DNA of 64,000 bases, from IMG/VR virus record IMGVR_UViG_3300035698_018317, positions 1 through 64,000 of that record. One strand, 5' to 3'. A program made the position numbers and the translations under genes. Below are positions 1-18,047 of this stretch, piece by piece. Position 1 is the stretch's first letter. Every line of letters begins with the position of its first letter. Below the pieces are notes generated by a model, which was given only the letters and a program-made list of their open reading frames with translations, was not told the DNA's origin and ran no database searches.

Positions 1-190
1 AACGAAATGCTTATCAGAGAATACAAAGGCGTCAAGTTCCCTTGCCCCGGTGTCTGCACAAATAAGTGGGATACCGAAGATTGGAAACAGTGGATTGAAA
101 ATCACAGAACCAATTAGTTATTAATTAACTTGTACATGATTGGTCAGTAAGTAAACGAACGAAACACTTTAGTAAAGGATTACCACCACC

Positions 191-664
191 ATGCCGAAGA
201 AACCCACCGAAACAACTGCACTCGAAGACATCCGAGCCAAAATCGAAGAAACCAAACAGGAAATGGCCGAAAGAGACCAAGTAATCGAGGCGGCGCAAGA
301 ACTGAACGAACTGAATAAGAAAGCCAATCAGCAAATCGACATGCTGAACCGACTCGCAATCTGCGCCGACGACACCGATGTTGACTGGTTGATGGTTTAC
401 AAAACGCAGTCCCACCGCTTCAACAAAGGCGGTACGCCGCTCGAAATTCTCCATCTGCTGATTGCGGGGAAAATCGAAACCAACGATAAAAACTGCCTGA
501 CCCCGGCAGATGTACGGGACCAGTTGATAGCACTGGGATACCACAAATACGCCGCTTTCAATAACAACCAAGGCTATGCGTTGGTCTACGGTGCCTTGCG
601 AAAAATCGGGGCAATGGCCGGAATGCAATGGATGAACGCCATCCGAGTCGGCATCTACATCTAA
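191..664 (+). CDS. Hypothetical protein (probable early gene)
   Basis: 157-aa ORF with AAAGGA SD upstream, followed by a 15-bp hairpin. Confidence 0.75.
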   Translation: MPKKPTETTALEDIRAKIEETKQEMAERDQVIEAAQELNELNKKANQQIDMLNRLAICADDTDVDWLMVYKTQSHRFNKGGTPLEILHLLIAGKIETNDKNCLTPADVRDQLIALGYHKYAAFNNNQGYALVYGALRKIGAMAGMQWMNAIRVGIYI

Positions 665-678
665 AACCCACTAACCAC

Positions 679-717
679 GATATCCCGTTAGGTGAAGCTC
701 ATACCTAACGGGATATC
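679..717 (+). terminator. 15-bp stem-loop after ORF 191-664
   Basis: GATATCCCGTTAGGT / ACCTAACGGGATATC, followed by TGTTT. Confidence 0.7.
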
Positions 718-935
718 TGTTTATATTCAACCCCCTGTACATGATAATCAATTGCTTATAATAAACTAATTCGTTAGCATGTACACAATGGAGCATGAAG
801 CAAAGTAACACAATACAACGAAACTGACGAAAAGAAAAGAAAAGTAATTAGTTAAGTTGTACATGATGAGATGTAAAGTAAAACAAACAATCGCCACACT
901 AACCAAAGACGCACAGAGAAGAGAAGGAAAAGCCC

Positions 936-1292
936 ATGATTACACCGGAATCAATCACGACCCTGACCGAAGCCGAAAAGCTCCAAGCAGATGCGCTCGA
1001 AGCACACTGCGACGGAATCATCGGACCCGCAAGCCAGTTGGACCCCGCCCAGAAAGATTACGTTGTCGATATGGGTGCTTACGCCAAGGCCGCCAAGAAA
1101 GCCGACAAGGACTTTGTCCTGTCCATCAAGGTCCGGGCGAACGTAGCCACACGCTACGAAGAGGCGAACTGGAAAGTCGCTTACGATGTCGCAACGTCCA
1201 AGCTGACTTTCACCATGCCCAAGGTGAAACGCACGTACAAGAAACGTGACCCCTCGCCCGCCGTAGTCGTACCGCCCGCCGAAGCTGCATAA
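936..1292 (+). CDS. Hypothetical protein ending -AEAA
   Basis: 118-aa ORF with AAGGAAA SD. Confidence 0.75.
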   Translation: MITPESITTLTEAEKLQADALEAHCDGIIGPASQLDPAQKDYVVDMGAYAKAAKKADKDFVLSIKVRANVATRYEEANWKVAYDVATSKLTFTMPKVKRTYKKRDPSPAVVVPPAEAA

Positions 1293-1338
1293 CTGCATAA
1301 CCGCATAACTCCGAAGCTGTAAAAATATTATCGGAACG

Positions 1339-1374
1339 GCCCCGCTGGAATTCCACCAGCGGGGCTTTGTTTTA
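1339..1374 (+). terminator. Intrinsic terminator
   Basis: GCCCCGCTGG / CCAGCGGGGC stem followed by TTTGTTTT. Confidence 0.75.
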
Positions 1375-1475
1375 TATTAAGTTATTAGTTAGCATGTACA
1401 TAAGAAGGTAGTTAAAAGGCAACGTGACGCAACACCCCCGACCGGATGGCCCTATATAACTGGGCACTGCGGGGG

Positions 1476-1519
1476 AAGCCCCGGCATCGTCCCCCGAAGG
1501 GATGCCGGGGCTTTGTTTT
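1476..1519 (+). terminator. Intrinsic terminator
   Basis: AAGCCCCGGCATC / GATGCCGGGGCTT stem followed by TGTTTT. Confidence 0.75.
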
Positions 1520-1577
1520 ATATTAAGTTATTAATTAGCATGTACATAAGTAAGTGTTCAGAATGAAAGGAACAACA

Positions 1578-2018
1578 ATGTCATTGAACGTGAATTTCGA
1601 CGAATGTAAACCAGCCTTTGAAAAATGCGACAAAGGCTACAAACCCGAAGGACCATTTGCCATGGTCAAACGTGACGAAAAGGGCAATATCACACATCGT
1701 CTTACCCATACATGTCGAGCCATCGTTGGAATGCTCATGGGCCTCGGCATGGGAAGAATCACAGGAAAGACGGTTAACGAGTTCACCGAAAGAAGCGAAC
1801 TCTGGCAGGATGTAATCGGACCATGTGGACCGGGATGGTGCGATGATGCAGAGGACGAAATCAAATACGTGCGAATAACCCCCGAAGATATCCGCAACCA
1901 TATCGGCTTGGCCTCCAACGTGTCCAAAGAGACAAATGCAGTCTTCTACAAGAAGCTGCGGGGCAACGTCAAGGACCGTCTGTGGAGACTGGCCCAGAAA
2001 GCCGCCCAAGCTGCATAA
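1578..2018 (+). CDS. Hypothetical protein ending -KAAQAA
   Basis: GAAAGGAACAACA-ATG at 1578 preferred over the ORF-track start at 1554. Confidence 0.75.
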   Translation: MSLNVNFDECKPAFEKCDKGYKPEGPFAMVKRDEKGNITHRLTHTCRAIVGMLMGLGMGRITGKTVNEFTERSELWQDVIGPCGPGWCDDAEDEIKYVRITPEDIRNHIGLASNVSKETNAVFYKKLRGNVKDRLWRLAQKAAQAA

Positions 2019-2064
2019 CGAAGGTCGATGAGGTGCGACCCGCCATGCAAACCAGCTCAACAAG

Positions 2065-2099
2065 AAGTCCCCGCCCCGGATGGGTGGGGACTTTCCTTT
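2065..2099 (+). terminator. Intrinsic terminator
   Basis: AAGTCCCCGCCC / GGGTGGGGACTT stem (one G-T pair) followed by TCCTTT. Confidence 0.7.
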
Positions 2100-2157
2100 A
2101 TATTAAGTTATTAGTTAGCATGTACATAAGTAAGTGTTCAGAACGAAAGGAAACGAC

Positions 2158-2343
2158 ATGGACGCAAATCAGGCAGCAGACAAACTGGCAAAAGCCGCTA
2201 GTAAAGACACCAAAGGCAAAGGCACCGACCATCTAGGCACCAGTATGAGAGACATGCTGAAGGCTGGTGTAAGCGACGAGGTGCTGCTGACAGGCATGAG
2301 TGTGGCATCAGGGTACTTATCCCCCGAGTCCGCCGTAGCCTAA
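2158..2343 (+). CDS. Small hypothetical protein
   Basis: GAAAGGAAACGAC-ATG; sits in a motif/hairpin cassette. Confidence 0.65.
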   Translation: MDANQAADKLAKAASKDTKGKGTDHLGTSMRDMLKAGVSDEVLLTGMSVASGYLSPESAVA

Positions 2344-2364
2344 CCCCCCGCCCCCTAACCCTTG

Positions 2365-2392
2365 GCCCCGCCCCCTCCGGGCGGGGTCTCTT
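2365..2392 (+). terminator. GC-rich hairpin/terminator
   Basis: GCCCCGCCC / GGGCGGGGT stem followed by CTCTT and the conserved motif. Confidence 0.55.
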
Positions 2393-2458
2393 ATATATTA
2401 AGGTATTAATTAGCATGTACAGGGATTACTTTACTAATTAGCATGTACAAGATAGTGC

Positions 2459-2659
2459 ATGAGCAAGTCGAAGACCCTCATCATTGCTGCTCTGCTGTTG
2501 GCCCTCCCTGCTGGTATCGTACTCGCAGGAACATGGCTGACAGTGCAACGGCACAAACGGAAAGGACTCACCGATGAACATCAAGCTCGAAGCAATGGAA
2601 CAGGCACGCAGACAGGAGCAGGAACGACTCACCACGAACTGCTCACCGTGTACTCCTGA
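2459..2659 (+). CDS. Small protein with N-terminal hydrophobic segment
   Basis: 66 aa, LIIAALLLALPAGIVLAG; directly downstream of two TGTACA motifs. Confidence 0.5.
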   Translation: MSKSKTLIIAALLLALPAGIVLAGTWLTVQRHKRKGLTDEHQARSNGTGTQTGAGTTHHELLTVYS

Positions 2660-2806
2660 CGAACACTGTGCCGAGTGCCCCGGTCAAGGGTAACACGACA
2701 ACATACCAGCATCCCCGACCCCGCAGCAATGCGGGGCGGGGTTGCTTAGTTACCTTGTACATGATGGGGTGTAAGATACACCACCATGAACGAAAGGAAA
2801 CACATC

Positions 2807-3100
2807 ATGGACGCATCGAGAGACGAGAGAGTGATAGCAATCAGAGCCGACAACCTCATCGGTACAGACTCATGCTCATTCATTGATGAATGCTTGAGTG
2901 ATGCTGACATCGTAGAGGAACTAGACAGGCGTAACATAGTGTCACCTGTCGATGCTATCAAGCACCTCATCGACGCACAGCATGGACAGTACGAGCGAGG
3001 GTTGGGTACACGAGCAGGCGACGATGATGACCCCATCCTCATTCAGTTCAACGACTGGGTAGTCAGACGTGACGCTCACCTACTCACACTACCCAGCTAA
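2807..3100 (+). CDS. Hypothetical protein
   Basis: GAAAGGAAACACATC-ATG at 2807; followed by a 14-bp hairpin. Confidence 0.65.
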   Translation: MDASRDERVIAIRADNLIGTDSCSFIDECLSDADIVEELDRRNIVSPVDAIKHLIDAQHGQYERGLGTRAGDDDDPILIQFNDWVVRRDAHLLTLPS

Positions 3101-3112
3101 CCCAGCCCAGCC

Positions 3113-3146
3113 CCCAGCCCTGCCCCGGTCAGGGGGCAGGGCTGGG
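3113..3146 (+). terminator. 14-bp GC hairpin closing the cassette region
   Basis: CCCAGCCCTGCCCC / GGGGCAGGGCTGGG; no clear U-tract. Confidence 0.5.
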
Positions 3147-3547
3147 TGACGTAGTGACGTACCATGGTATGTTGCTACCTATATATGTAAAGGTATTGAT
3201 ACGATGCACCCGAAAAAAAACCACGCCACACTAAAACATAATTTAAAATTAAAAAATTATTTTCAAAAAAGTATGGCACCCACCCCCCTACCCCCCCCTC
3301 CCCCACAATAACGCACCTCTGTCTTAGTTTTGGGCCGTGGGGAAATTCGCATACATGTTACATAATTGATAACATATCAACTTTTGGGGTTTTGTATAGG
3401 GGTTAAAAAATATACACCGAATAAGGTCCAAAAAATCGGCGGGGAGTTTTGCCATATCTACATAACTTTTTTGTCAGAAATTGTTGTTTTTCCGTATAGT
3501 GTTGATATAATCCACTAATCAACTGTTAACCCAAAAGGAATAAGATT

Positions 3548-4156
3548 ATGCTAATAGGTCTCGAAAAAGAGTTTTTTTTACTGAAAGATGGTAAGCCCCA
3601 ACCTTTGAATGCGATTTCACTTCCATGTGATGAGTGTGGTTGGCTGGTAGAAGCTAGAGGTGGACCTCATCTATCAATCATAGATGCTGTTTTTAGCCTT
3701 AAATCTGCCGTTTATAAGATAGAAAGGTCTATTGCAGCGATGAATGCCAAACTGCCTGCTGACGAACCCCCATATGTTTTGAGCGACAATCCTGTAATGA
3801 AAATTGACCGTGCTACTAAAGTGAAGTGTGCTCGTAACTTTGCTAAAGGTATCATTAGTTATCAAAACTTACATGGTCATCAAAGCCACCGTCATTCTCT
3901 TTCAGAAGGTACAGCGGGTGTTCATGTAAGCTTTACAGAGAGCCAAGCGGTTTACCACGATAAGAAAAAGTATGAATATCATCGCAATTTCGATTGGCCG
4001 CAGATTTTCATCAAGTTAGATAAAGCTTTTGCTGAAGAAATCAAAGAATCAAAACGGCGTCCCGGTTTCTATGAATTGAAAACAGACGGTAGGGTAGAAT
4101 ATCGTTCCCTTCCTGCTAATGTAGATTTGGATAAGCTGATTAACGTATTGATGTAA
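3548..4156 (+). CDS. Minimal COOH-NH2 ligase (glutamate-cysteine ligase-like / phiEco32-type)
   Basis: Motifs IGLEKEFFL, LVEAR, TAGVHVSF and GRVEYRSLP; AAAGGAA SD. Confidence 0.6.
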   Translation: MLIGLEKEFFLLKDGKPQPLNAISLPCDECGWLVEARGGPHLSIIDAVFSLKSAVYKIERSIAAMNAKLPADEPPYVLSDNPVMKIDRATKVKCARNFAKGIISYQNLHGHQSHRHSLSEGTAGVHVSFTESQAVYHDKKKYEYHRNFDWPQIFIKLDKAFAEEIKESKRRPGFYELKTDGRVEYRSLPANVDLDKLINVLM

Positions 4157-7868: not shown

Positions 7869-8078
7869 TTACGACACTTTGTTGATAGCATCTTTCCACG
7901 ACGCAAACCACAGAGCATCTTCAAACGCTTCTTCCCAACCATTACTGCGGCTCCCATCGGGAAAAAACATCTCGCTATAATACTTATTCCCTTGGACTAA
8001 GACGTACCTAGGATATTCTTCTGGACCTACACGTTTAATTATTTTTTGTTTAGCAAATTCTGGGTTGTATTCATTCAT
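7869..8078 (-). CDS. Hypothetical protein, paralog of 8071-8307
   Basis: Shared KRVGPE..PRYVL.QG.KYY and AF.DALWF segments. Confidence 0.65.
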   Translation of the reverse strand: MNEYNPEFAKQKIIKRVGPEEYPRYVLVQGNKYYSEMFFPDGSRSNGWEEAFEDALWFASWKDAINKVS

Positions 8079-8307
8079 TTTTGTTTTTCTTAAAGAAGTT
8101 TCGATTAAAGTATGATTCTCCACCAGCTAGCGTTTCAAACCACAATGCGTCTGGAAACGCTCCAAACTCACCATCGGCACAATAATACTTACCTCCTTGA
8201 GCCAAGACGTACCTTGGAAATTTTTCTGGACCTACACGTTTAATAGTGATATCAAAATTATCACGAATCCATTCTTTCCATAATTTCAAACTCTTATATT
8301 CTTTCAT
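8071..8307 (-). CDS. Hypothetical protein, paralog of 7869-8078
   Basis: GAAAGG SD; starts just past the end of CRISPR array 1. Confidence 0.65.
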   Translation of the reverse strand: MKEYKSLKLWKEWIRDNFDITIKRVGPEKFPRYVLAQGGKYYCADGEFGAFPDALWFETLAGGESYFNRNFFKKNKNE

Positions 8308-8333
8308 TTTATTACCTTTCAAAATATCCTAGT

Positions 8334-8973
8334 CAAACACCCCTACGCATGTAGGGAAAACCTCGGACGACGCTGTTTATGGCGGACCCTCCGTAGGGAC
8401 ACCCCTACGCATGTAGGGAAAACGACCTGCTTGAACGCTTGGAAATTTCTGGTACAGGGACACCCCTACGCATGTAGGGAAAACAAATAAAACAATCAGG
8501 AGACAAAGAGTTGGCTAAGGGACACCCCTACGCATGTAGGGAAAACGCTCTGTAAGCTGTCGTAAGGAAGACTCAGTGGGGACACCCCTACGCATGTAGG
8601 GAAAACTTAGAACTTTCTATGTTGCCGTTAGAACCCTCAATGGGGACACCCCTACGCATGTAGGGAACACGCTGCTGATTTGGCAACATTCAGAGCAGAT
8701 GAAGGGACACCCCTACGTTGTAGGGAAAAATTAAACAATCGTTTTTTCAACAGAAAACCCATTGGTACACCCCTACGCATATGTAGGGAAAACATAAAAA
8801 GAGGAGAAATAAAACGAGAACACTGGGTACACCCCTACGAATGTAGGGAACCTATCGTTGCGATACTCAGACGTGGTATTCCTTGGGGACACCCCTACGC
8901 ATGGTAGGGAAAATGGCCAAGTGGTTCACCGTGGCCAACCATGAACCGGGAACACCCTTACATGTAGGGATAC
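8334..8973 (-). CRISPR. CRISPR array 1: 11 repeats, 10 spacers, type I-E
   Basis: 28-nt repeat GTTTTCCCTACATGCGTAGGGGTGTCCC (minus sense). Plus-strand repeat starts at 8334, 8396, 8457, 8519, 8579, 8643, 8704, 8764, 8826, 8886 and 8948; spacers 32-36 nt. Confidence 0.97.
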
Positions 8974-8975
8974 AA

Positions 8976-9545
8976 TCATCGGCTTAACAGCAACATTCCA
9001 AATCCAAAAGATTTACCTTTGCCTATACCTTTTTTAATGGTTTGAGAGAAATCTTCTGTAGAAGTTATTTTTAACTTACCTTTGAAAACAACTTTGTTAT
9101 GTGTTTGTTTACCTATTTTGTCTTTGAATTGTATTGATGATGGTTGTCCTATATTAAGACCACATATAGTAAACCCATGCTGTTTACCTTTTCTCACAAT
9201 CCAACGCACTAAATCTTTTTCTTCAGTAATAGCTCTATATTTTTTATTTTGTTTAACAACAGGATTTGCTGTTAATACAAAATTAAATATTTTTCCGTCC
9301 TTTACACCGACATCAAATTGTTTAACATCTGCGTGGAACTTTTTATCTGACCAATTAGGTTTTGTTTCAGACTGTACCAAAACAGAGTCATCACAAACAA
9401 CATATAGGACATTATGGTTCTGTCTAGCCATTCCTTTTTCATCGGGGAATCCAGACATTACGGTTCTATGTATTTGATAATTTGATGCAATAAGTCTATA
9501 ACATTCTGGGGTTGGTTTAAATTTTAATTTTGATAAGAACATCAT
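8976..9545 (-). CDS. cas6e: Type I-E crRNA endonuclease Cas6e
   Basis: YQIHRTV, VLVQS, F.LTANP and C-terminal G-loop GIGKGKSFGFG. Confidence 0.93.
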   Translation of the reverse strand: MMFLSKLKFKPTPECYRLIASNYQIHRTVMSGFPDEKGMARQNHNVLYVVCDDSVLVQSETKPNWSDKKFHADVKQFDVGVKDGKIFNFVLTANPVVKQNKKYRAITEEKDLVRWIVRKGKQHGFTICGLNIGQPSSIQFKDKIGKQTHNKVVFKGKLKITSTEDFSQTIKKGIGKGKSFGFGMLLLSR

Positions 9546-10162
9546 TCTCCTTTACCAAAGTCAACATGAACAGATTGGATGTTTCTAGCCCCATATACTT
9601 TATCTGATATAGGAACATCCTCAACTCGTTCGCTGTCTATTGTTTTTTCATTAGTTTCTACAATAAATCTAACAACATTTTTTGCAGGTAGTTGTTTAAG
9701 AGCATCAAATGGGTTTTCATCATTTGTGACTTTAGAGATAATTGGTGTCGTAATAGGACATGCCAACCTTCCCATATAAAGATGATAACATGGATGGTTT
9801 AAGCCTTCAGTTATTTCATCCACGAGTATGTCATCGCCTGTCAATGCGACAGTGAATTGACTATCGGAAGAGAGGTAATATCTCCATGTTTGAACACTTT
9901 GTTTCCCTTTTCCAATCAATTTAACGAAATTACCAGCATTTTGGTAGTCGCATTCTTTTACACCTTGATTATCAACTCGCACCGCCATTCGAAGGCTAAG
10001 AAGTTCCTTAGCCTTCGAATGGTTAGAACGGATTCCCATAGCGGATTTAATTAAGCCTAGTATTCCGCTATAAGTTGGTTCATTGCGAGTTTCTCGATAA
10101 ACATGCTTGCTGCTATCGCCCCAACTCTGCATACCTTTAAGTGTTAATATAATGGTTTTCAT
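9542..10162 (-). CDS. cas5e: Type I-E Cas5
   Basis: MQSWG, EPTYSGILGLI and LYMGRLACP; start moved to 10162 (AAGGGA SD). Confidence 0.93.
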   Translation of the reverse strand: MKTIILTLKGMQSWGDSSKHVYRETRNEPTYSGILGLIKSAMGIRSNHSKAKELLSLRMAVRVDNQGVKECDYQNAGNFVKLIGKGKQSVQTWRYYLSSDSQFTVALTGDDILVDEITEGLNHPCYHLYMGRLACPITTPIISKVTNDENPFDALKQLPAKNVVRFIVETNEKTIDSERVEDVPISDKVYGARNIQSVHVDFGKGE

Positions 10163-10166
10163 TTTT

Positions 10167-11267
10167 TTATCCCTTAAGAGTATCCACAACTTTTTCGCAT
10201 ACTTCTTGTAAGGACATCTTGCCGTCAATATCCTTTAAGGAGCATACAAACGTGTGAGAAGGTTTATTTCCAAAAGTTTCTTCTACTGCTTGTCGATATT
10301 CGAAGAAGTTACGGATAGCCACATCAGTAAGGCTTTCTTTATCTTTATGATTGGGAACTACTGGAGTCTCAAAAGCGTTCACATCGCTATTTGGTTGAGT
10401 ATCCAAAATGTCCACAACCACAAGGGCAGGCACAACATTATTGGCAAATGTATTAGCTTTTCCTTTTGGTACGTCCATAGCGAATGCTGAAATGAATTCA
10501 GCACATGCCTCTGCTGTAAGATTGGCGTCATCAAGATTTTCCATAAGTTTATCAACGCAAATTGAAGCATATTGATAATAGCAGGAAGAATTAAACGACA
10601 ATGAGCCAAGGTGACCAGCCCCAGTGGTATCCTCTTCCCCAGAGTCAATCTTAAGGTCATCTATTGCTGTAAAATAATCAAATTCTTCAGCAAGGGCATT
10701 CACACCCATTGCATGGGCGACCTGTACAGCGGCATAAACTTCATGGGTTTTGACGGTAGCTTGCATTCTTCCGAACATGGCAACATCGACAGTGATGCCA
10801 ATAGGTTTCCCATGAAGTATTTTCTTGATATTCTTGATATCAAAATCGTCTTCCTTCATTGCCACAACAACTCTGTCAATAATGCTATCAATTTCTTTAT
10901 CAGACGTAAAAATCAAACAGGATGTAAGGTTTTCTTTTCCTTTTTTACTATTTCTCTTCTTGTCGAAAACTGTGTTAACGATAGCATTGGCAATATTAAC
11001 ACGAGTTTTTTCATCTTCTACAAAATCCAACTTGTTGATGATTCGTTTAAGAATCATCTGTGTTCGAATTCCGTGATAAGCATGAACTTTTTCAGCGTCC
11101 ATGTTCTCATGCCAGAATTCACGAACCATTCTCTTAAGACATTGGCTAGAAATTCTGGAGCGGCGGGAGCCACCAAATACACAATCTTTTTGTTCTCCAC
11201 TATCATCCGCATTAGGTCTAGACACGGGGTAGTTCTTCAATAATCCAATCTTTACAAATTTTGACAT
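10167..11267 (-). CDS. cas7e: Type I-E backbone subunit Cas7
   Basis: NADDSGEQKDCVFGG.RRSRISSQCLKR, DVAMFGRM, VQVAHA and DYFTAIDD. Confidence 0.95.
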   Translation of the reverse strand: MSKFVKIGLLKNYPVSRPNADDSGEQKDCVFGGSRRSRISSQCLKRMVREFWHENMDAEKVHAYHGIRTQMILKRIINKLDFVEDEKTRVNIANAIVNTVFDKKRNSKKGKENLTSCLIFTSDKEIDSIIDRVVVAMKEDDFDIKNIKKILHGKPIGITVDVAMFGRMQATVKTHEVYAAVQVAHAMGVNALAEEFDYFTAIDDLKIDSGEEDTTGAGHLGSLSFNSSCYYQYASICVDKLMENLDDANLTAEACAEFISAFAMDVPKGKANTFANNVVPALVVVDILDTQPNSDVNAFETPVVPNHKDKESLTDVAIRNFFEYRQAVEETFGNKPSHTFVCSLKDIDGKMSLQEVCEKVVDTLKG

Positions 11268-11284
11268 TTTTTTAATTCCTTCTG

Positions 11285-11815
11285 TTATGCCATTTCTGGC
11301 GAGTTAATTTTTTCTTTTTTTGATTCTACTTTTTTTACTGGTTGTTCCCAAAAATCTTTTGAGAATTTGTTTTGAACCCACATATCATCTTCTTTCCACC
11401 ATGTTAATCCTTGTAACAAATCAGCCCAATTAATCGGAATTCTTTTAGCTGCTGATAATCGTATCAGTGTTCCAAGATGTTGGAATACTGGGATTTCTTC
11501 TGTAGCATCTAGGAAAGAAAGAAATTTCCTATTCATTCCTTCTTCGCTATATTCCTTAATTAATGGTTTAATACTTTTACCAAATGATTTTGTGTCTGTA
11601 TGACGTGGGTTGATTGCGAATAAGCGTGCTGTATGAATGAAACAGAGATTACTCCAAGATTCATTTTGTGTTGGAAGGTATGGGTAAATATACCTACCAA
11701 TTTGAAACAGCTTAGTTGGGTTACTTTTCTTAAATTTTGACAATATAGCTGGGCCTCTTTTGCTTTTTGTCAATTTAACTAAATGGTCTATAAAATTGTC
11801 TATTCTTTTATTCAT
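11285..11815 (-). CDS. cse2: Type I-E small subunit Cas11 (Cse2)
   Basis: Lies between cas8e and cas7; helical, with INWADLL and KDFW motifs. Confidence 0.88.
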   Translation of the reverse strand: MNKRIDNFIDHLVKLTKSKRGPAILSKFKKSNPTKLFQIGRYIYPYLPTQNESWSNLCFIHTARLFAINPRHTDTKSFGKSIKPLIKEYSEEGMNRKFLSFLDATEEIPVFQHLGTLIRLSAAKRIPINWADLLQGLTWWKEDDMWVQNKFSKDFWEQPVKKVESKKEKINSPEMA

Positions 11816-13232
11816 TTTTCTTTCCTTTATTAAACAGGATGATTTCGAAACTTTTTAAATTTCCTTTTTGGTACAAGTATTCTAACACATTTTTTCGGCT
11901 CCCACTCATTAACTTTCTTGTTTCGTTCATGAATAATTTGTGGGCCACTTCTCTTATTTTTTTCACAAAAGATATTTTTGCTTCTACTGTCTTTTGAGAC
12001 ATGAATTCTAGAAATAAGGTGTTAGCTTCGCTCCAGAATAAAACTTTAACTTGTTCTGGACTTTCTAAAGTAAATTGTTTATAGAGACGATAAACAAAAC
12101 TTCTCAGGTGAACTCCTACACGATTAGCTTCTTCAACAACTTGACATATAATTTCCTGAATATCATCATTTTTGATACAGTCGGTTGAAAGAGGTAGTAC
12201 ATCTTCTGAAATCATTTTATATTTGGTTAATTTATCATCCATATAAAATCCATATGATTGATATCCAAAATCAATCATATCATCGAAGATGTCTAAGTTT
12301 TCATTGTTTGCAAAAACATACTCACCGTCTGCAACTCCAGCCTTGACAGAAATCACAAAGGATTTGAAATTATTCCATAAATGTTCAGCATGGGAAAAAC
12401 GGAGAGGTTTATACCCATCTTTGGTGTTTTTGTATACTACGAATGGGTCACGTAATCCTTCAATCGGTTCATTACCCTTATCCCAATACATATAGGAAAA
12501 AGTTCCATTGTCATTAGGAAGTAATTTGATGCTTCTGGAGCAACGAGTCAAATATTGCATATATCCACGGACTTTGTTATCATTTAATACCGGGGACTCA
12601 TCCTCCCAAACGGGACTATCTTCTTCTGTCTGCGGAATGTTAAGATTTTCATCTAAAGGATGGGCATTAAGCATAAATGTTTGGAATAAATTCTTTCCAG
12701 TAAGAAGAACGGGCATTCCACGTTGGCTAGACGCATGAAAAGTAGAACGATGTTCGCCAAGTCCTTTGCCAGTATTTAAGGCAAAAGATTGAAGTGTCAT
12801 CAATTGAATAGCTACATCTTCAGCTTGAACAGACGTAGTTTTGATAAAATTTCTTGATGACCATGATGCATCGGCATCTGTTAAAAAATTAAGTCTATTA
12901 ACAGATTCCTTTTTCTTTGTTTGAAGTTTGGGGTCTTGTAGGAAAGGCTTTTTGGTGTCTAGTAAATCAAAGCAAAAAGAGTTCAAATAATTGGTGGTTG
13001 ATTTATCAAAACAACCTTTTTCCCAAAGTGCTTTCCACTCTTCCTCATTGTTCAATCCGTAAGCTCTATAAAGAACGGGCAGGAACATCCTAGTGAAGGC
13101 CAAATTTTGAAGAGGCTGAGAAAATGCCGTAGATTCAATTTCGTGAGCATGTTCAAAGACGGAGATAAGGTTATGGCTTCCTTGTAACGTTGAAATCCAA
13201 TTTTCAGTTTTTAAGTCGTATGATGTCGTCAT
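11808..13232 (-). CDS. cas8e: Type I-E large subunit Cas8e (Cse1)
   Basis: YDL..ENWI, PLQNLAF.R, EEEW..LWEKG and FDL....PFLQ; GAAAGGAA SD gives a start at 13232. Confidence 0.9.
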   Translation of the reverse strand: MTTSYDLKTENWISTLQGSHNLISVFEHAHEIESTAFSQPLQNLAFTRMFLPVLYRAYGLNNEEEWKALWEKGCFDKSTTNYLNSFCFDLLDTKKPFLQDPKLQTKKKESVNRLNFLTDADASWSSRNFIKTTSVQAEDVAIQLMTLQSFALNTGKGLGEHRSTFHASSQRGMPVLLTGKNLFQTFMLNAHPLDENLNIPQTEEDSPVWEDESPVLNDNKVRGYMQYLTRCSRSIKLLPNDNGTFSYMYWDKGNEPIEGLRDPFVVYKNTKDGYKPLRFSHAEHLWNNFKSFVISVKAGVADGEYVFANNENLDIFDDMIDFGYQSYGFYMDDKLTKYKMISEDVLPLSTDCIKNDDIQEIICQVVEEANRVGVHLRSFVYRLYKQFTLESPEQVKVLFWSEANTLFLEFMSQKTVEAKISFVKKIREVAHKLFMNETRKLMSGSRKNVLEYLYQKGNLKSFEIILFNKGKKNE

Positions 13233-13265
13233 GTTATTTCCTTTCTTAATTATCATCATGTCAAG

Positions 13266-13294
13266 AATATACAGTATGATAAAATAAAAAGCAA
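13266..13294 (-). promoter_or_regulatory. Sigma70-like promoter for the cascade operon
   Basis: Minus strand TTGCTT-17 nt-TATATT between array 2 and cas8e. Confidence 0.5.
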
Positions 13295-13341
13295 GAGAAA
13301 TCCCATATTGTTTTTATTTGAAAAACATATTTTTTAGAAAC

Positions 13342-13740
13342 TTAACACCCCTACGAATGTAGGGAAAACAAAAAAAAGAAGAAGGAATTTCTCCCACGAT
13401 AAGGGACACCCCTACGTTTGTAGGGAAAACTTCTCTAAAAATTTACGAGCATCAGCAACTAGCGGGACACCCCTACGCATGTAGGGAAAACCAGCCGCAG
13501 AGAGATTCCAGAGCGTTCAGTTAGGGGCACCCCTACGCATGTAGGGAAAACGCTAGGTCAGTTCTTCGGGGCCACGTCGCACGAAAGGAACACCCCTACG
13601 TATGTAGGGAAAACCTTTCTGAGTTGCAGATTCGGTCGTGACAACGTTAGGGACACCCCTACGCATGTAGGGAAAACAAGCAATAGATAAAGCATTGAGC
13701 GAAGCTCAATGAGGGACACCCCTACGCATGTAGGGAAAAC
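13342..13740 (-). CRISPR. CRISPR array 2: 7 repeats, 6 spacers, between cas3 and cas8e
   Basis: Same repeat as array 1. Plus-strand starts at 13342, 13403, 13464, 13524, 13587, 13650 and 13713; spacers 32-35 nt. Confidence 0.97.
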
Positions 13741-13773
13741 TATAACATTTAGTAGTAGAGTAATATGTTGTGT

Positions 13774-16368
13774 TTAGTATTTTTTTAGTCTTTTGAGTTG
13801 TAGTCCATTTTCTAAATCATATTTGGCTTCGAAATTTGCTCGTTTTAAATAATTATTTTCATCTAGAATCAAAAGTCCGCAATATCTAAGTGGTGTGCGT
13901 TCCCACTCTTCTCGTATTGTTTTTTGGAAATAATTAAAGTAAGGGTTTCCAATAATTGGACATTGACTTTTTTGTAATAGTTCTATTTCTTTTTTATTTG
14001 GTATTTTTGTTAAATCGGGTGCAAGTATTTTCCTTTTTGGGTCTAAGTACCACCTTTTATCCCCTTGTTTATAGAATAAAATGACCACTTTCATTGCTGA
14101 AACAATATTTCTAGTGGATAGTTTATTCTCTTTTTCTTGTTTCTTAGAAGGATTTATGTTTAAATCATTATCTTCTTTTAAAACTATACTATTTGCTAAG
14201 TTTTCTTCTTTAACTTCTTTTTTTTCTAATTTGTCATGAGCTTTATTATAAGTTTCTTGTTCTTTTTTTGTAAGTTTTTCAAATGGTTTATACACATATT
14301 CAATTAATTCTTCAACCATATCTGGGATTTTTAATTGGGTCTTATTATGCAGTATATCATAAGTTCTTTGCATAGTATAAGAATCATAGACATAATTTTC
14401 TAGCACACCATCTTCATCGAATTCATAAACGACCCCTATTCTTGGAGAACGAAGCCCTAATGGTCGATTTATGATAAAGCGATGATTCCTGCCGCCTCGT
14501 TGTAACAATAAGTCAATTGGGCATAGAAATGTTAACATATAATCGAAATCTACATTAAGACTTTGTTCTATTATCTGAGTTCCTACTAAAATGGATATGA
14601 AAGGTCTTTTAGTACCATCTTTTCCATAATCACTAAGAACTTCTTGTGTTAATTTATCTTTATCTTCATCTCTAAATCGTGCATGAATTAATTTACGATG
14701 AATATCTGGGACCATTTTAGCTAGTAATTTATTTATTCTTTGTGCTTGTTTCACTGTGTTACAGACAATAGCTAGACATCCTCCATTTTTTATTTTTTTC
14801 AGAACATGTCCCAATAATTCATAATATTGTTGAACTACAATACCATTTTTTATTTTAAAATTAGGGTTTATATAAAAATGGTCTAATTTAATTGTTTTAG
14901 TTTTTTCAGGAGGTAATTTTTTAACAATTGTTTTATTTCCAGAAACTACACATACCCTAGGGTATGGAACGTCTTCTTTTAATTCGCCACCATAAGCTTC
15001 AACAAATTCTTTTTTCATTTGTTTTGTTAAGGTGGCAGATAGCATAATGACTGAACATCTTAGATTTTTAAGTTCTTTTAACAATCTTTTAATTAAGACT
15101 TGCATATAAGTGTCATAAGCGTGTATTTCATCAAAAATTACTACTTTATTTACTAGTCCATATAAACGGAGGAAGAAGTATTTTACAGGGACGACACCAA
15201 ACAGAGCTTGGTCTATTGTGCTATCACCAAACTGTGAGAAAAACTTACGCTTTCCACTATTGAACCATTCAAATGGGGAGACAGTATCTTTTGTGTCTAT
15301 TTTTTTATACCATTCATGAGCATTAGCATTGCCATGTCCTATTTGGAAATTTGCCTCTCCATCTGTTATATTTTCTAAATAGTTAACTGTTCTATCTACC
15401 ATGGCATTTGTAGTTGCTTGAGTTGGCATAAGAATATGCATCCCACGATGTCCAACATTTGTCATTAACTTATCTGAGGCATAGAAGCCCACTTCTGTCT
15501 TTCCCTGCCCCGTACTCATTTCGACAATCAAAAGAGATGGTTCTTTTAACTTATCTGCAATTTCTATAATTGTTTTTTGTGATTCATATGGAGTTATATT
15601 CGGGAACATTTCCTCAAAGCTTAAATCTTTAATAGGACATAAATCCATTTTGATATTATCTAATGCAAATTTAGCCTTTTGAGGAAGGTCTTTTACATAT
15701 TCTTGCCATGTTGTTTCTTCCCCTGCAAAGGGGAAGAAATTTTCATCGGAAGCAATCCAATCGGAGAGAGAAAGTAATCCTGAAAAGAAGAAATAAAAGT
15801 GTTGAGGCAACTTTGCTTTCTTCCATATTTTTGACGGAATTGGGAACACCTTTTGAATCACATCTATTGCTAATTCTTGTTGTTCTTTCCACTTATCATC
15901 TTTTAAACATTTAAAGAAAAATCTTCCATCTTGTTTTCTAGGTTTTGGGAGAACTGAGTATCGCCCATGATGACCACCAAGAAGGGAACAAAGTGTATCA
16001 GGCAATTTTCCATTCATTATTTGTTTAGAAAATACTTCATGTCGGAAATGTGGTTTGTTCTTTCCATCTAGACCAAAAAAGTTATACCCATCATCTTGTA
16101 ACGGCTTATAAGCTTCAGATTGAATAGCAAAATTTGGTGTTATTTTACCAATATCATGATATGGAACTATTCCAACTACAAATTGTATTGCTTCATCTTT
16201 AGTTAATCCCAATGAATTAGCCATATATTCTAATTCTTCATCAGGCAGTATCCTAAGAAGAATTTCTTTAGCAATAAAACCCGAATCTAACATATGAAAT
16301 AAAGCAGGATGTGTTTTCTTTGTTGCTCTGTCAAATTTACCCCAAATTTTATAATCTATTTTATTCAT
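13774..16368 (-). CDS. cas3: Cas3 HD nuclease-helicase
   Basis: HDIGK, HHG, SDWIASD, STGQGKTE, DEIH, SATL and QRGGR.HR; start at 16368 overlaps the upstream stop (TGATG). Confidence 0.95.
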   Translation of the reverse strand: MNKIDYKIWGKFDRATKKTHPALFHMLDSGFIAKEILLRILPDEELEYMANSLGLTKDEAIQFVVGIVPYHDIGKITPNFAIQSEAYKPLQDDGYNFFGLDGKNKPHFRHEVFSKQIMNGKLPDTLCSLLGGHHGRYSVLPKPRKQDGRFFFKCLKDDKWKEQQELAIDVIQKVFPIPSKIWKKAKLPQHFYFFFSGLLSLSDWIASDENFFPFAGEETTWQEYVKDLPQKAKFALDNIKMDLCPIKDLSFEEMFPNITPYESQKTIIEIADKLKEPSLLIVEMSTGQGKTEVGFYASDKLMTNVGHRGMHILMPTQATTNAMVDRTVNYLENITDGEANFQIGHGNANAHEWYKKIDTKDTVSPFEWFNSGKRKFFSQFGDSTIDQALFGVVPVKYFFLRLYGLVNKVVIFDEIHAYDTYMQVLIKRLLKELKNLRCSVIMLSATLTKQMKKEFVEAYGGELKEDVPYPRVCVVSGNKTIVKKLPPEKTKTIKLDHFYINPNFKIKNGIVVQQYYELLGHVLKKIKNGGCLAIVCNTVKQAQRINKLLAKMVPDIHRKLIHARFRDEDKDKLTQEVLSDYGKDGTKRPFISILVGTQIIEQSLNVDFDYMLTFLCPIDLLLQRGGRNHRFIINRPLGLRSPRIGVVYEFDEDGVLENYVYDSYTMQRTYDILHNKTQLKIPDMVEELIEYVYKPFEKLTKKEQETYNKAHDKLEKKEVKEENLANSIVLKEDNDLNINPSKKQEKENKLSTRNIVSAMKVVILFYKQGDKRWYLDPKRKILAPDLTKIPNKKEIELLQKSQCPIIGNPYFNYFQKTIREEWERTPLRYCGLLILDENNYLKRANFEAKYDLENGLQLKRLKKY

Positions 16369-16685
16369 CACCCACCAATGCCCATGTTGTTCTTGTAAGG
16401 CCATATGATACGGCCAGATTGTAAGATATCCCACACCATTTTTTTCCATACTTTTCTTATATGGATATGAAATTCTTCAGATGTTACTAATTTTTTTTCA
16501 ATAAGTTGGAATCCCAATTCAGAATCATCAACACCCATTCTATTAAGAGCTTCCCACAAATATCCTACTATTTTATCAACTGTTCTATATTTCTTTCTAA
16601 TATCTTTATCATGCATTGCGACTTCTGCATGTTCGAATATTAGTTCGGCTGCTTCGCACACACGTTCTGATAATTCTGTACACAT
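16368..16685 (-). CDS. Small helical protein whose stop overlaps the cas3 start; paralog of 16691-16981
   Basis: Starts MCTELSERVCEAAELIFEH. Confidence 0.75.
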   Translation of the reverse strand: MCTELSERVCEAAELIFEHAEVAMHDKDIRKKYRTVDKIVGYLWEALNRMGVDDSELGFQLIEKKLVTSEEFHIHIRKVWKKMVWDILQSGRIIWPYKNNMGIGG

Positions 16686-16690
16686 TTATT

Positions 16691-16981
16691 TTACCTTTTA
16701 ATAGCGCCAGTTCGGATAATTGTCCACACCATTTGTTTCCACACAGTCTTTAAAGATTTTGCTCTATCACGGAAGTGTATCTCTGTCACAAGATTATCAT
16801 TAATGAGTTGCATCCCAAATTCGGTATCGTCTATACCAATGTTTAGAAGAACATCCCACAAATATTCTTCTACTTTAAGCTTTGTTTTGTAATAATGATT
16901 TGCATTATGTAAGGCGGCATCTCTATGTTCAAACACTAACTCAGTTGCTTCAAATACACGTTCTGATAATTCTGTACACAT
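16691..16981 (-). CDS. Small helical protein, paralog of 16368-16685
   Basis: Starts MCTELSERVFEATELVFEH; AAAGGAA SD. Confidence 0.75.
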   Translation of the reverse strand: MCTELSERVFEATELVFEHRDAALHNANHYYKTKLKVEEYLWDVLLNIGIDDTEFGMQLINDNLVTEIHFRDRAKSLKTVWKQMVWTIIRTGAIKR

Positions 16982-16991
16982 TATTTTTCCT

Positions 16992-17669
16992 TTACCAGCG
17001 TCCTCTTCTTTGGAGGGCGTTTAATCCACCACCACATCCACCTTGAGGAAATTGTAATCCATTTCTATTTTGGTTAGGTCGGTTATTATAGTTTAAGGCG
17101 TTAAGTCTTGCTCTTTCTACCTTCTGAGCGGCCAGTTTCTTTTCTGCTCTTAATTTTCTAGCCGCAGATTTTTCTAATTTTGCTTTTTTAGCAAGTTCTT
17201 CCCGAATGTATTTCCCATTTTTTATTTTAGATATTTTGGACCCTAGGGTGAACCACGTATTTTTTATAATAGGCAGATTATCTTTTAAACAAGACATGAC
17301 GAACTTCCCATTAGGAAGTTTACCAACCCTAATGGTATTATTTCCAGCTTTACAAGCGGTTACTTTTGCATCAGGGTTTAGATATAATTTATTCCTATGT
17401 CTTCTAATTGGGTATTTCTTAGTATCTACTTCCCCCATACTTGTTCGGGGCATACTTCTCAGTCTCATATCTGGTATAACGTATAATTTAAAATTGTTGA
17501 ATTGATAATATGCTCCACTTGACCTTCTTCTGGTGTCATCGGGTGCGCTGAACAGAAAACGTAGGATACAGGCTGATATGTCTAGAACACAGGCCAAGAA
17601 TATTATAAACCTGTTTTTTGCGTACCAGCTACCTATACCGTCCCATATATTCTCGTGTGGGAGTTTCAT
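16992..17669 (-). CDS. Hypothetical basic protein with N-terminal hydrophobic segment
   Basis: ORF starting MKLPHE; K/R-rich C-terminal helix. Confidence 0.65.
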   Translation of the reverse strand: MKLPHENIWDGIGSWYAKNRFIIFLACVLDISACILRFLFSAPDDTRRRSSGAYYQFNNFKLYVIPDMRLRSMPRTSMGEVDTKKYPIRRHRNKLYLNPDAKVTACKAGNNTIRVGKLPNGKFVMSCLKDNLPIIKNTWFTLGSKISKIKNGKYIREELAKKAKLEKSAARKLRAEKKLAAQKVERARLNALNYNNRPNQNRNGLQFPQGGCGGGLNALQRRGRW

Positions 17670-17756
17670 ATTATCTCTTCCTTGCATCGGTTGGTTACGA
17701 ATTATCCGTTAACTTTATCCGATTCTGCTCTACATAACAATAGGAAAGGGGAAAAA

Positions 17757-18047
17757 ATGCCTAAATTAACACGAAAAAGCCCAAAAACTAAGACGAAGAT
17801 TAAAACAGTAATCAAGCGAGTTATGGTTAAAGAGAAAAAGGAGTCTAAGAAGATTCCTTATAAAATCGAGATATTTTCTGACAAGAGCAAAAAGCCTCGA
17901 TGGAGATTGGTAAGTACAAACGGTAATATTTTAGCTACCAGTGAAGCTTACGCTCGTAAGAACACTCGAACGAAGATAGCAGAGAACCTTGCAAGTGGTT
18001 TAGGGCTATCTGGCGTAGAGGAATCTGATAGAGTTGATTTGTCGTAA
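17757..18047 (+). CDS. DUF1508/YegP-like protein
   Basis: IEIFSDKSKKPRWRLVSTNGNILATSEAY resembles the DUF1508 pattern; GGAAAGGGG SD. Confidence 0.7.
   Translation: MPKLTRKSPKTKTKIKTVIKRVMVKEKKESKKIPYKIEIFSDKSKKPRWRLVSTNGNILATSEAYARKNTRTKIAENLASGLGLSGVEESDRVDLS

What the first reader, a model, noticed from the sequence alone, without database searches (positions are those of the whole stretch)
8643..8978. Leaderless arrays with reversed degeneration polarity
Seen: in the transcribed (minus) sense array 1 begins 2 nt after the cas6e stop codon, and its first six repeats are variant while the next four are perfect. Array 2 begins only 33 nt after the cas3 stop. Known: Cas1-Cas2 integrates at the leader end, so degeneration normally accumulates at the trailer. 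Inference: these arrays are updated by another route (recombination with a host array or internal integration), or are frozen.
Basis: partly seen in the sequence, partly recalled or inferred. Interest (0 to 1): 0.6.

Follow-up and report, generated by a model that had tools for sequence, protein, structure and literature searches.

The report
Phage CRISPR array with self-regulating guide
A giant salt-lake phage carries a CRISPR system that cannot add spacers, and the odd repeats next to cas6e are an old inherited block holding a guide that probably turns down the phage's own cas genes, not a sign of spacers entering at the wrong end.

Summary
The window is the first 64 kb of a 225 kb phage record. 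It carries cas3, array 2 (7 repeats), cse1, cse2, cas7, cas5, cas6e and array 1 (11 repeats), all on the minus strand, with no cas1 or cas2. Array 1 starts 1-2 nt after the cas6e stop. R1-R6 are variant, R7-R10 perfect, and R11 has a decayed 3' end. Array 2 starts 33 nt after the cas3 stop and has ordinary polarity.

- The variant repeats are not decayed: none of 19 changes breaks the 7-bp stem.
- Array 1 showed no differences in the contigs that cover it, from four runs and four other assemblies.
- Only one spacer, Sx (8731-8763), with its flanking repeats R4 and R5, is shared by three lineages. In a relative that has cas1-cas2, this unit lies between cas6e and cas1.
- Sx positions 2-16 match the region just upstream of cse1 (13292-13306), with mismatches only at positions 6 and 12 (family-wise p about 7e-4). 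This is the signature of known self-repressing CreR-type mini-arrays.
- Relatives with cas1-cas2 also have very short leaders (15-37 nt) and normal polarity.

Array 1 is best read as a composite, static, operon-embedded array. This is a new variant of known kinds.

The parts
13774..16449 (-). cas3 (HD nuclease plus helicase). The true start may lie downstream of 16449, because the called ORF overlaps the upstream ORF.
   Evidence: Pfam Cas3_HD 1e-31, Cas3-like_C_2, DEAD and Helicase_C; ORF list
13741..13773 (-). 33-nt gap between the cas3 stop and the first repeat of array 2
13342..13740 (-). Array 2: 7 repeats and 6 spacers. R1, R2 and R5 are perfect. R3, R4 and R6 are variant in the loop or handle. 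R7 is terminal with a decayed 3' end. Polarity is ordinary. Its first spacer (13678-13712) is an 8-bp hairpin followed by a U-rich tail.
13292..13309 (-). Predicted target of guide Sx. 13306-13292 (ATGGGATTTCTCTTG) matches Sx positions 2-16 except at guide positions 6 and 12. It is preceded by AAT (13309-13307).
   Evidence: the same pair is present in relative L003
13266..13294 (-). Putative promoter of the Cascade operon: TTGCTT (13294-13289), 17 nt, TATATT (13271-13266). The -35-like hexamer overlaps the last 3 nt of the Sx target. Read by eye; the consensus scan did not list it.
   Evidence: Sequence. This 58-nt block has 3 differences from L003, while third codon positions are only 73-87% identical. 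Promoter function is inferred.
11808..13259 (-). cse1/cas8e. The likely true start is the ATG at 13232, which follows GAAAGGAAAT and aligns with the start in L003.
   Evidence: Pfam CRISPR_Cse1 1e-51
11285..11815 (-). cse2/cas11
   Evidence: Pfam CRISPR_Cse2 9e-15
10167..11267 (-). cas7e
   Evidence: Pfam Cas_CT1975 3e-88
9542..10228 (-). cas5e. Relatives have 206 aa, so the true start is probably near 10162.
   Evidence: Pfam Cas_Cas5d 4e-31
8976..9545 (-). cas6e, with its TGA stop at 8978-8976
   Evidence: Pfam CRISPR_assoc (Cse3) 4e-36
8704..8974 (-). Array 1, cas6e-proximal old block: variant repeats R1-R5 with spacers S1, S2, S3 and Sx. R2-R5 keep a 7-bp stem; R1 keeps only 4 bp.
   Evidence: repeat variants shared with L008 and L003
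8731..8763 (-). Sx, the fourth spacer of array 1. It is the only spacer shared by the three lineages and is the predicted self-regulating guide. Its pairing part is 8762-8748.
8334..8703 (-). Array 1, distal block: S5, R6 (one substitution), then R7-R10 perfect and R11 terminal. Spacers S5-S10 are specific to this lineage.
8071..8322 (-). Next gene, a small ORF of unknown family. Its ATG lies about 26 nt after R11, so the array is packed between genes with no trailer.

Best explanation
Array 1 is a composite, static array that lies in the 3' untranslated part of the Cascade operon of a giant phage. The phage's type I-E system has no adaptation genes.

Shown:
- The arrays read in minus sense.
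- They have no free-standing leader.
- The variant repeats next to cas6e keep the Cas6e hairpin.
- The unit R4-Sx-R5 is inherited in three lineages.
- The presence or absence of cas1-cas2 between relatives maps to R5.
- The array showed no differences in any sample that covers it.

Inferred:
- The operon, array included, is transcribed from a promoter just upstream of cse1.
- Cas6e cuts the transcript at each hairpin.
- The crRNA carrying Sx loads into Cascade and binds next to AAT over the -35 region of that same promoter. Only 15 positions pair, which is too few to call in Cas3, so the result is negative feedback on Cascade expression, as in CreR-type mini-arrays.
- The perfect distal block is what remains of the ordinary array that follows cas2 in relatives. 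An exchange at repeat R5 that removed cas1-cas2 (or added them in the relative) joined the two blocks.

On this reading the 'reversed polarity' comes from old, selected repeats sitting in front of a younger block. It does not come from integration at the far end.
For: Orientation:
- The repeat has the I-E layout: 5 nt, a hairpin, then 7+1 nt of handle.
- Both terminal repeats decay at their 3' ends in minus sense.
- The arrays point the same way as the cas genes.
- The Sx match lies at the spacer's 5' end only when read in minus sense.

Selection on the repeats: 19 changes fall in the flank, loop and handle, and none breaks the 14 stem positions (uniform expectation 2e-6).

Stasis:
- Pieces covering the arrays from four runs had no other letters and no joints.
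- L004 and L005 are 100% identical across the whole array, and L006 and L007 across the part they reach.
- No Cas1 or Cas2 was found in 225 kb.

Inheritance:
- R4-Sx-R5 is shared by the window, L008 (91% nt identity) and L003 (87%). All other spacers differ.
- In L003 the unit ends 12 nt before the cas1 ATG.
- The first 22 nt of Sx are identical between the window and L003 although dS is 0.24-0.60.

Target:
- The Sx match is the longest seed-anchored match of all 16 spacers in the 225 kb, and it lies between array 2 and cse1.
- Mismatches occur only at positions 6 and 12.
- Only 2 of 3000 sets of shuffled guides do as well in that region.
- The same guide-target pair occurs in L003.

Precedent: I-E mini-arrays with partial, seed-anchored matches to the cas8 promoter have been described, and one was shown to repress it (PMC10120712; bioRxiv 10.1101/2023.03.10.532045).

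Relatives with cas1-cas2: their arrays start 15-37 nt after cas2. In L015/L016 the repeats are perfect and the first spacers differ.
Against: - There is no RNA evidence; no RNA run holds the stretch.
- The promoter was read by eye, and the consensus scan found no excess of promoter-like sites.
- The system's PAM is unknown because no protospacer was found. AAT is therefore only compatible.
- The Sx match was noticed before it was tested.
- The contig of the cas1-cas2 relative L003 ends 12 nt after cas2, so the array that the fusion model needs was not seen.
- Cas1 and Cascade give conflicting trees, so the direction of the event (loss here or gain there) is open.
- S1-S3 differ between the window and L008 although the repeat variants around them are shared. 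A purely static old block does not explain that.
- The record is estimated to be 44% complete, so cas1-cas2 could lie elsewhere in the genome.
- Contigs hide rare array variants.
Confidence: 0.55

Rival explanations
1. The arrays are, or recently were, updated by a non-canonical route. This could be integration at internal or distal repeats by a Cas1-Cas2 supplied in trans (by the host or a co-infecting phage), or exchange of spacer cassettes by recombination between arrays. New perfect repeats would then arise away from the cas6e end.
For: The window and the L008 lineage both lack cas1-cas2 at this locus, yet they share none of their spacers except Sx. This holds even between repeats that share odd variants. 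Perfect repeats R7-R10 lie in the distal half. Cas1 and Cascade trees conflict, which shows that modules recombine in this clade. A paper on a salt-lake huge phage proposes use of host adaptation genes (PMC7416419).
Against: No cas1 or cas2 is found in the 225 kb. No array with this repeat turned up in 185,579 species genomes, apart from one lone degenerate unit in a Treponema MAG, or in JGI metagenomes apart from the phage's own contig. None was found in IMG/VR. No array polymorphism appeared in four runs and four assemblies. Contigs with identical spacers carry the phage's own flanking genes. R6 carries a substitution that R7-R10 lack, so they are not copies of R6.
Confidence: 0.2
2. Array 1 is a decaying relic with no working parts. 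The variant repeats are neutral drift in a frozen array, and the Sx match upstream of cse1 is coincidence.
For: There is no adaptation module. No target was found for any spacer. R1 has lost most of its stem. The match is only 13 paired bases in AT-rich DNA.
Against: None of 19 repeat changes breaks a stem. The first 22 nt of Sx and the 58-nt block around its target are more conserved than third codon positions. The family-wise chance of such a match in that region is about 7e-4. The cas genes are intact with dN/dS well below 1.
Confidence: 0.2
3. The arrays are transcribed and extended from the other end: plus-strand transcription with the leader on the 8330 side. The degenerate repeats would then lie at a normal trailer.
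For: The perfect repeats lie towards 8334.
Against: Only about 26 nt separate R11 from the start of the next minus-strand gene. In plus sense the repeat would have 7 nt before the hairpin and 5 nt after, unlike I-E repeats. The last repeat in minus sense has the typical decayed 3' end in both arrays. Array 2 would then have reversed polarity instead. The Sx seed match fits minus sense only.
Confidence: 0.03

Closest known systems
CreR / cr-like regulatory mini-arrays of type I-E (Salmonella enterica, E. coli): Shmakov et al. 2023 (PMC10120712); Liu et al. 2023 (bioRxiv 10.1101/2023.03.10.532045)
   Same: Two repeat-like units flank a spacer whose 5' part matches the cas8e (casA) promoter region next to a PAM-like motif. 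Mismatches fall at every sixth position. The seed is conserved while the 3' part drifts, and the stem-loops are kept while their bases vary. The unit is conserved among related loci, and in L003 its distal repeat is decayed.
   Different: The known I-E cases stand alone in the cas3-cas8e gap and are reported as transcribed opposite to cas3. Here the unit lies after cas6e, in the same sense as the operon, as the fourth unit of an 11-repeat array, in a phage. No experiment supports this case.
CRISPR-Cas systems of huge phages that lack adaptation genes (Al-Shayeb et al. 2020, PMC7162821); the ~528 kb Ace Lake huge phage (PMC7416419)
   Same: The phage record exceeds 200 kb, has intact effector genes, no cas1/cas2/cas4 and short arrays (11 and 7 repeats; the reported median is 6). 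It comes from a salt lake.
   Different: Those reports do not describe array polarity, arrays embedded in the operon or self-regulating guides. The Ace Lake phage was typed 'putative I-C', whereas this system is I-E by Pfam. Whether it is the same phage was not shown.
Canonical E. coli K-12 type I-E locus (own knowledge; also described in PMC10120712)
   Same: The gene order cas3, cse1, cse2, cas7, cas5, cas6e is the same, as is the repeat layout with an 8-nt 5' handle.
   Different: E. coli has cas1-cas2 and an AT-rich leader with an IHF site before the array. Here there is no cas1-cas2, one array starts 1-2 nt after cas6e, and a second array lies between cas3 and cse1.
Vibrio phage ICP1 type I-F system (Seed et al. 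2013, cited in PMC7162821; details from own knowledge)
   Same: A phage-borne type I system with its own arrays.
   Different: ICP1 keeps adaptation genes and gains spacers. This phage shows neither.

Membership tests
Type I-E CRISPR-Cas | Cas3 with an HD nuclease and a superfamily 2 helicase | tested here: met
   Pfam Cas3_HD, DEAD, Helicase_C and Cas3-like_C_2 on 13774-16449
Type I-E CRISPR-Cas | Cascade genes cse1/cas8e, cse2, cas7e, cas5e and cas6e in that order | tested here: met
   All five Pfam families score above their cut-offs, in canonical order on the minus strand
Type I-E CRISPR-Cas | Repeat of about 29 nt with a hairpin and an 8-nt 5' handle, cut by Cas6e | tested here: inconclusive
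   The layout 5 nt + 7-bp hairpin + 7(+1) nt fits. Cleavage cannot be tested here, and no Rfam CRISPR-DR family matched.
Type I-E CRISPR-Cas | Adaptation module cas1e-cas2e next to the array | tested here: not met
   No match to PF01867 or PF09707 in the 225 kb record, while the control genomes matched. The record is estimated to be 44% complete.
Regulatory mini-CRISPR (CreR / cr-like RNA) | Two repeat-like units flanking a spacer-like sequence inside a cas locus | tested here: met
   R4-Sx-R5, 8704-8793
Regulatory mini-CRISPR (CreR / cr-like RNA) | Unit conserved among related loci while ordinary spacers vary | tested here: met
   Shared by the window, L008 and L003; every other spacer differs
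Regulatory mini-CRISPR (CreR / cr-like RNA) | Partial, seed-anchored match (10 nt or more) to the promoter region of an effector cas gene | tested here: met
   15 positions with mismatches only at 6 and 12, at 13306-13292 upstream of cse1. 2 of 3000 shuffled sets do as well. That the site is a promoter is inferred.
Regulatory mini-CRISPR (CreR / cr-like RNA) | Target flanked by the system's PAM | tested here: inconclusive
   The flank is AAT in the window and in L003. The base after the 28-nt repeat is T in 17 of 26 spacers. This would fit a PAM ending in T if, as in E. coli, that base derives from the PAM (own knowledge). No true protospacer was found to define the PAM.
Regulatory mini-CRISPR (CreR / cr-like RNA) | Stand-alone element in an intergenic gap, two repeats only | tested here: not met
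   In the window it is unit 4 of an 11-repeat array. In L003 it is part of a 3-repeat mini-array between cas6e and cas1.
Regulatory mini-CRISPR (CreR / cr-like RNA) | Represses the target promoter through the effector complex | not testable with these tools
   Needs a reporter assay; no RNA runs are available
Adaptation-less CRISPR-Cas of huge phages | Phage genome over 200 kb with effector genes and short arrays but no cas1/cas2/cas4 | tested here: met
   Virus record of 225,284 bases; baseplate and tRNA nucleotidyltransferase PHROGs
Canonical leader-driven CRISPR array | Non-coding AT-rich leader with a promoter and integration signals before the first repeat | tested here: not met
   The gaps are 1-2 nt and 33 nt. 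Relatives with cas1-cas2 also have only 15-37 nt.

The most novel reading that the evidence does not exclude
A giant phage runs a self-contained feedback loop. The guide that represses the Cascade promoter is carried inside the array that forms the 3' end of the same transcript, so Cascade output is set by competition between this guide and the defence guides. In addition, in lineages without Cas1-Cas2, spacer cassettes are swapped between phage arrays by recombination within repeat cores. That would keep the odd repeat ends while replacing the spacers, and it would be an integrase-free route of array renewal.
Probability: 0.15. Interest if true: 0.7.

Novelty: new variant of a known kind. Interest (0 to 1): 0.5.

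Why it matters
Repeat degeneration is widely used to orient arrays and to tell old spacers from new ones. This case shows that the rule can fail because a conserved regulatory unit and an ordinary array have been joined, not because integration is unusual. If the Sx guide does repress the cse1 promoter, self-regulation by crRNA-like guides would extend to phage-borne systems and to guides hidden inside normal-looking arrays. Searches for stand-alone mini-arrays would miss such guides. The case also gives a small natural I-E module (effector genes plus arrays in one transcript) whose feedback could be tested directly.

Tried and rejected
- Close relatives in IMG/VR: the exact repeat, Cas6e, Cas1 of L003, Cas7 and a conserved promoter 28-mer all found nothing. 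GenBank phages had no match to the 9 kb locus.
- Host arrays: a loosened repeat pattern in 185,579 species genomes gave one lone degenerate unit beside an I-E locus of a Treponema MAG. JGI metagenomes gave only the phage's own contig.
- Spacer targets: none in the phage's own 225 kb beyond chance 11-15-mers, none in GenBank phages at E up to 10, and none in IMG/VR for Sx and two high-complexity spacers.
- Idea that Sx is a relic of the short leader seen after cas2 in L015/L016: the local alignment is not better than shuffles. Rejected.
- Promoter and terminator scan of 8000-17800: promoter-like sites are at chance level.
- Rfam: no family matched at gathering score.
- RNA evidence: no RNA run holds the stretch.
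- Kin genomes cannot be drawn for a virus record.
- The upstream region of cse1 in the L008 lineage, wanted as a covariation test at guide position 15, was not recovered: seven contigs all stop inside cse1.
- The array downstream of cas2 in the L003 lineage was not recovered.

Full report
**What is there**

The window is the first 64 kb of a 225,284-base virus record that CheckV rates 44% complete. Baseplate proteins and a tRNA nucleotidyltransferase mark it as a large tailed phage. DNA runs labelled salt lake metagenome hold it.

On the minus strand lie, in order:
- cas3 (13774-16449)
- array 2 (13342-13740)
- cse1, cse2, cas7, cas5 and cas6e (8976-13259)
- array 1 (8334-8974)
- further small genes

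All six cas genes match their type I-E Pfam families well above the cut-offs. No Cas1 or Cas2 is found anywhere in the 225 kb, although the same searches hit the control genomes. These are the only two arrays in the record.

**Checking the observation**

Read in minus sense, the consensus repeat is GTTTTCCCTACATGCGTAGGGGTGTCCC.
- Array 1 begins 1-2 nt after the TGA stop of cas6e.
- R1-R6 are variant, R7-R10 are perfect, and R11 is perfect except for its last three bases.
- Array 2 begins 33 nt after the cas3 stop. Its first two repeats are perfect and its variants lie further on.

Two points should be added. The unusual polarity concerns array 1 only. Array 1 also has an ordinary decayed terminal repeat at its far end.

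**Orientation**

Four things point to minus sense.
- The repeat then has 5 nt, a hairpin and a 7(+1)-nt tail. This is the layout of I-E repeats with an 8-nt 5' handle (own knowledge of the E. coli and Thermus repeats).
- Both terminal repeats decay at their 3' ends.
- The arrays share the direction of the cas genes.
- The one informative spacer match, described below, lies at the 5' seed end only in this sense.

On the far side only about 26 nt separate R11 from the next gene's start. No leader fits there either.

**The variant repeats are not decayed**

Leaving out R1 and the two terminal 3' ends, 19 changes separate the repeats from the consensus. Six are in the first four bases. Nine are in the loop or lengthen it; this count includes the one-base insertion in R2, which the script placed at the stem edge but which leaves the stem intact in the fold. 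Four are in the handle. None breaks the 14 stem positions. Under a uniform spread that has probability about 2e-6.

Relatives add a wobble-compatible change and a compensatory pair: L003 has CCCCAC/GTGGGG in place of CCCTAC/GTAGGG. The hairpin that Cas6e should bind is therefore under selection. Only R1 has lost it, keeping 4 bp.

**Relatives**

Proteins 90% or more identical to Cas6e led to short metagenome contigs of three lineages.

*The same phage.* L004 and L005 are 100% identical across all of array 1 and the genes beyond it. L006 and L007 are identical as far as they reach. Logan contigs of four runs from four samples covered both arrays in pieces with no differing letters, no insertions or deletions and no joints. 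Contigs hide rare variants, but nothing suggests gain or loss at either end.

*L008, L009 and L002.* These are 91% identical in the cas genes and have no cas1-cas2 after cas6e. Their array also starts right after the stop and also has variant proximal repeats. All its spacers differ, with one exception.

*L003.* This contig is 87% identical and does carry cas1-cas2. Between cas6e and cas1 it has three repeats and two spacers.

The exception is Sx (window 8731-8763) together with its flanking repeats R4 (handle GTGTACC) and R5 (starting TTTTT). This unit is present in all three lineages. In L003 it ends 12 nt before the cas1 start codon, and its distal repeat has a decayed 3' end. In the window and in L008 the same repeat has a normal 3' end and is followed by lineage-specific spacers. 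The difference 'cas1-cas2 present or absent' therefore maps to repeat R5.

The direction of this event cannot be settled. Cas1 groups L003 with L011 (69% identity), whereas Cas5 and Cas6e group L011 with L012. The adaptation and effector modules have therefore been reshuffled in this clade.

**Short leaders are normal in this clade**

- In L012-L014 the array starts 15 nt after the cas2 stop.
- In L015/L016 it starts 37 nt after the stop. The repeats there are perfect, and the first spacers differ between two samples that share identical cas2 and gap sequences.

The L015/L016 pattern is what acquisition at the cas-proximal end gives. The lack of a free-standing leader therefore does not by itself argue for another route.

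**What Sx may do**

Taking the 8-nt handle into account, the guide starts at the second base of Sx. Guide positions 1-15 (8762-8748, ATGGGTTTTCTGTTG) equal 13306-13292 (ATGGGATTTCTCTTG) except at positions 6 and 12. Those are the positions that type I complexes do not pair. The site is preceded by AAT and lies between array 2 and the cse1 start.

- Among all 16 spacers, this is the longest seed-anchored match anywhere in the 225 kb.
- The other 15 spacers reach at most 6 positions in that region.
- Only 2 of 3000 sets of composition-matched shuffled guides reach 15 there.
- L003 has the same guide, the same target and the same AAT flank.
- The first 22 nt of Sx are identical between the window and L003, whereas its 3' part differs. 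The 58 nt around the target differ at 3 sites. In the cas genes dS is 0.24-0.60 and third-position identity is 0.73-0.87.
- The last three bases of the target are the first three of TTGCTT. That hexamer, with TATATT 17 nt further on, could be the operon promoter. This was read by eye and is an inference.

The pattern matches published regulatory mini-arrays. In I-E, I-F1, I-B and I-D loci the spacer partially matches the promoter region of cas8 (or its counterpart) next to a PAM. The seed is conserved, the sixth position is often mismatched, and the stem-loops are kept while their bases vary (PMC10120712). A Salmonella I-E element of this kind repressed the casA promoter about 8.6-fold through E. 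coli Cascade, and the repression was relieved by competing crRNAs (bioRxiv 10.1101/2023.03.10.532045).

**Most likely working**

Shown:
- minus-sense arrays packed into the operon;
- intact hairpins in the variant repeats;
- the inherited Sx unit;
- no differences in the arrays in any sample that covers them;
- no adaptation genes in the DNA held.

Inferred:
- One transcript runs from upstream of cse1 through cas6e and array 1.
- Cas6e releases the crRNAs.
- Most crRNAs serve interference with Cas3 against unknown targets.
- The Sx crRNA brings Cascade to the operon's own promoter and lowers its output.
- The proximal block is old because selection keeps it.
- The distal perfect block is the remainder of the array that follows cas2 in relatives, joined to the old block by an exchange at R5.

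I put this at about 0.55.

**Rivals**

- *Updating by another route* (trans-acting Cas1-Cas2, internal integration or recombination). This rival keeps some weight, about 0.2. The window and L008 share odd repeat variants (TGTAT, AGGTT, GTGTACC, TTTTT) but not the spacers S1-S3 between them. A static block does not explain that. No compatible host array was found.
- *Neutral relic with a chance match*, about 0.2. The spared stems, the conservation and the shuffle test speak against it.
- *Plus-strand reading*, about 0.03.

**Limits**

- There are no RNA data.
- No protospacer was found, so the PAM is unknown.
- The contigs of L003 and of the L008 lineage stop short of the decisive parts.
- The record is incomplete.
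- A paper on Ace Lake describes a complete ~528 kb huge phage with a CRISPR-Cas system lacking cas1, cas2 and cas4, typed 'putative I-C' (PMC7416419). The size fits 225 kb at 44% completeness, but identity with this record was not shown.
- That paper reports identical spacers on contigs assigned to bacteria. Here, the contigs with identical spacers carry the phage's own flanking genes, so such assignments need care.

**Novelty**

The parts are known: phage systems without adaptation genes, compact arrays, and self-repressing mini-arrays aimed at cas8 promoters. The arrangement is new. The regulatory unit sits after cas6e, in the sense of the operon, as one unit of a longer array in a giant phage. 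The resulting false 'reversed polarity' is also new. I rate it a new variant of a known kind, with interest 0.5.

Noticed in passing
window 1-4000: This block has 48% G+C against about 36% elsewhere. It holds small plus-strand genes, each preceded by a GC hairpin with a T run and then a conserved ~40-nt motif (TATATTAAGTTATTAATTAGCATGTACATAAG). This looks like terminators and phage-specific promoters. No tRNA and no convincing Rfam match was found.
   Followed up: partly
window 13678-13712 (minus): The first spacer of array 2, right after cas3, folds into an 8-bp hairpin followed by a U-rich tail (z = -3.8; 0 of 200 shuffles fold as well). The terminator scan also lists it. It may end or attenuate cas3 transcripts inside the array.
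   Followed up: partly
window 16368-16685 and 16691-16981; 7869-8123 and 8071-8322 (minus): Pairs of paralogous small ORFs flank the cas locus on both sides (repeat families D8, D12, D10 and D15). For those searched (both upstream ORFs and 8071-8322), no credible Pfam or PHROG match was found, only a sub-threshold Phosphodiest hit for 16368-16685. They could be regulators or anti-defence genes.
   Followed up: partly
window 13232 vs 13259: The called cse1 start (ATG at 13259) is probably wrong. The ATG at 13232 follows GAAAGGAAAT and aligns with the start in L003, where the upstream ATG runs into a stop.
   Followed up: yes
L003:1-210: The cas1-cas2-bearing relative also has an array between cas3 and cse1. 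Its repeats use the stem CCCCAC/GTGGGG instead of CCCTAC/GTAGGG, a compensatory pair change. Its mini-array after cas6e keeps the CCCTAC type.
   Followed up: partly
L001:5540-5720: A Treponema MAG has three unlike repeat-like hairpins just upstream of, and divergent from, the cas3 gene of an I-E locus (cas3, cse1, cse2, cas6e). It resembles the mini-arrays reported near cas3.
   Followed up: partly
L017:643-2399: In an L011-like I-E locus, cas2 is cut short at 56 aa by an IS605-type element carrying OrfB/TnpB and a Y1 transposase.
   Followed up: no
L012:2709-2843 and L014:1174-1254: The first spacers after cas2 in two samples are similar but diverged (about three quarters identical by eye). 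In L012 the second repeat is degenerate. This cas1-cas2 lineage therefore also carries an old-looking proximal unit.
   Followed up: no
window 172,600-173,000 of the full record (outside the window): A partial match of one spacer picked up GGTTCGAGTCC motifs, which suggests tRNA genes in the phage. The match itself is at chance level.
   Followed up: no
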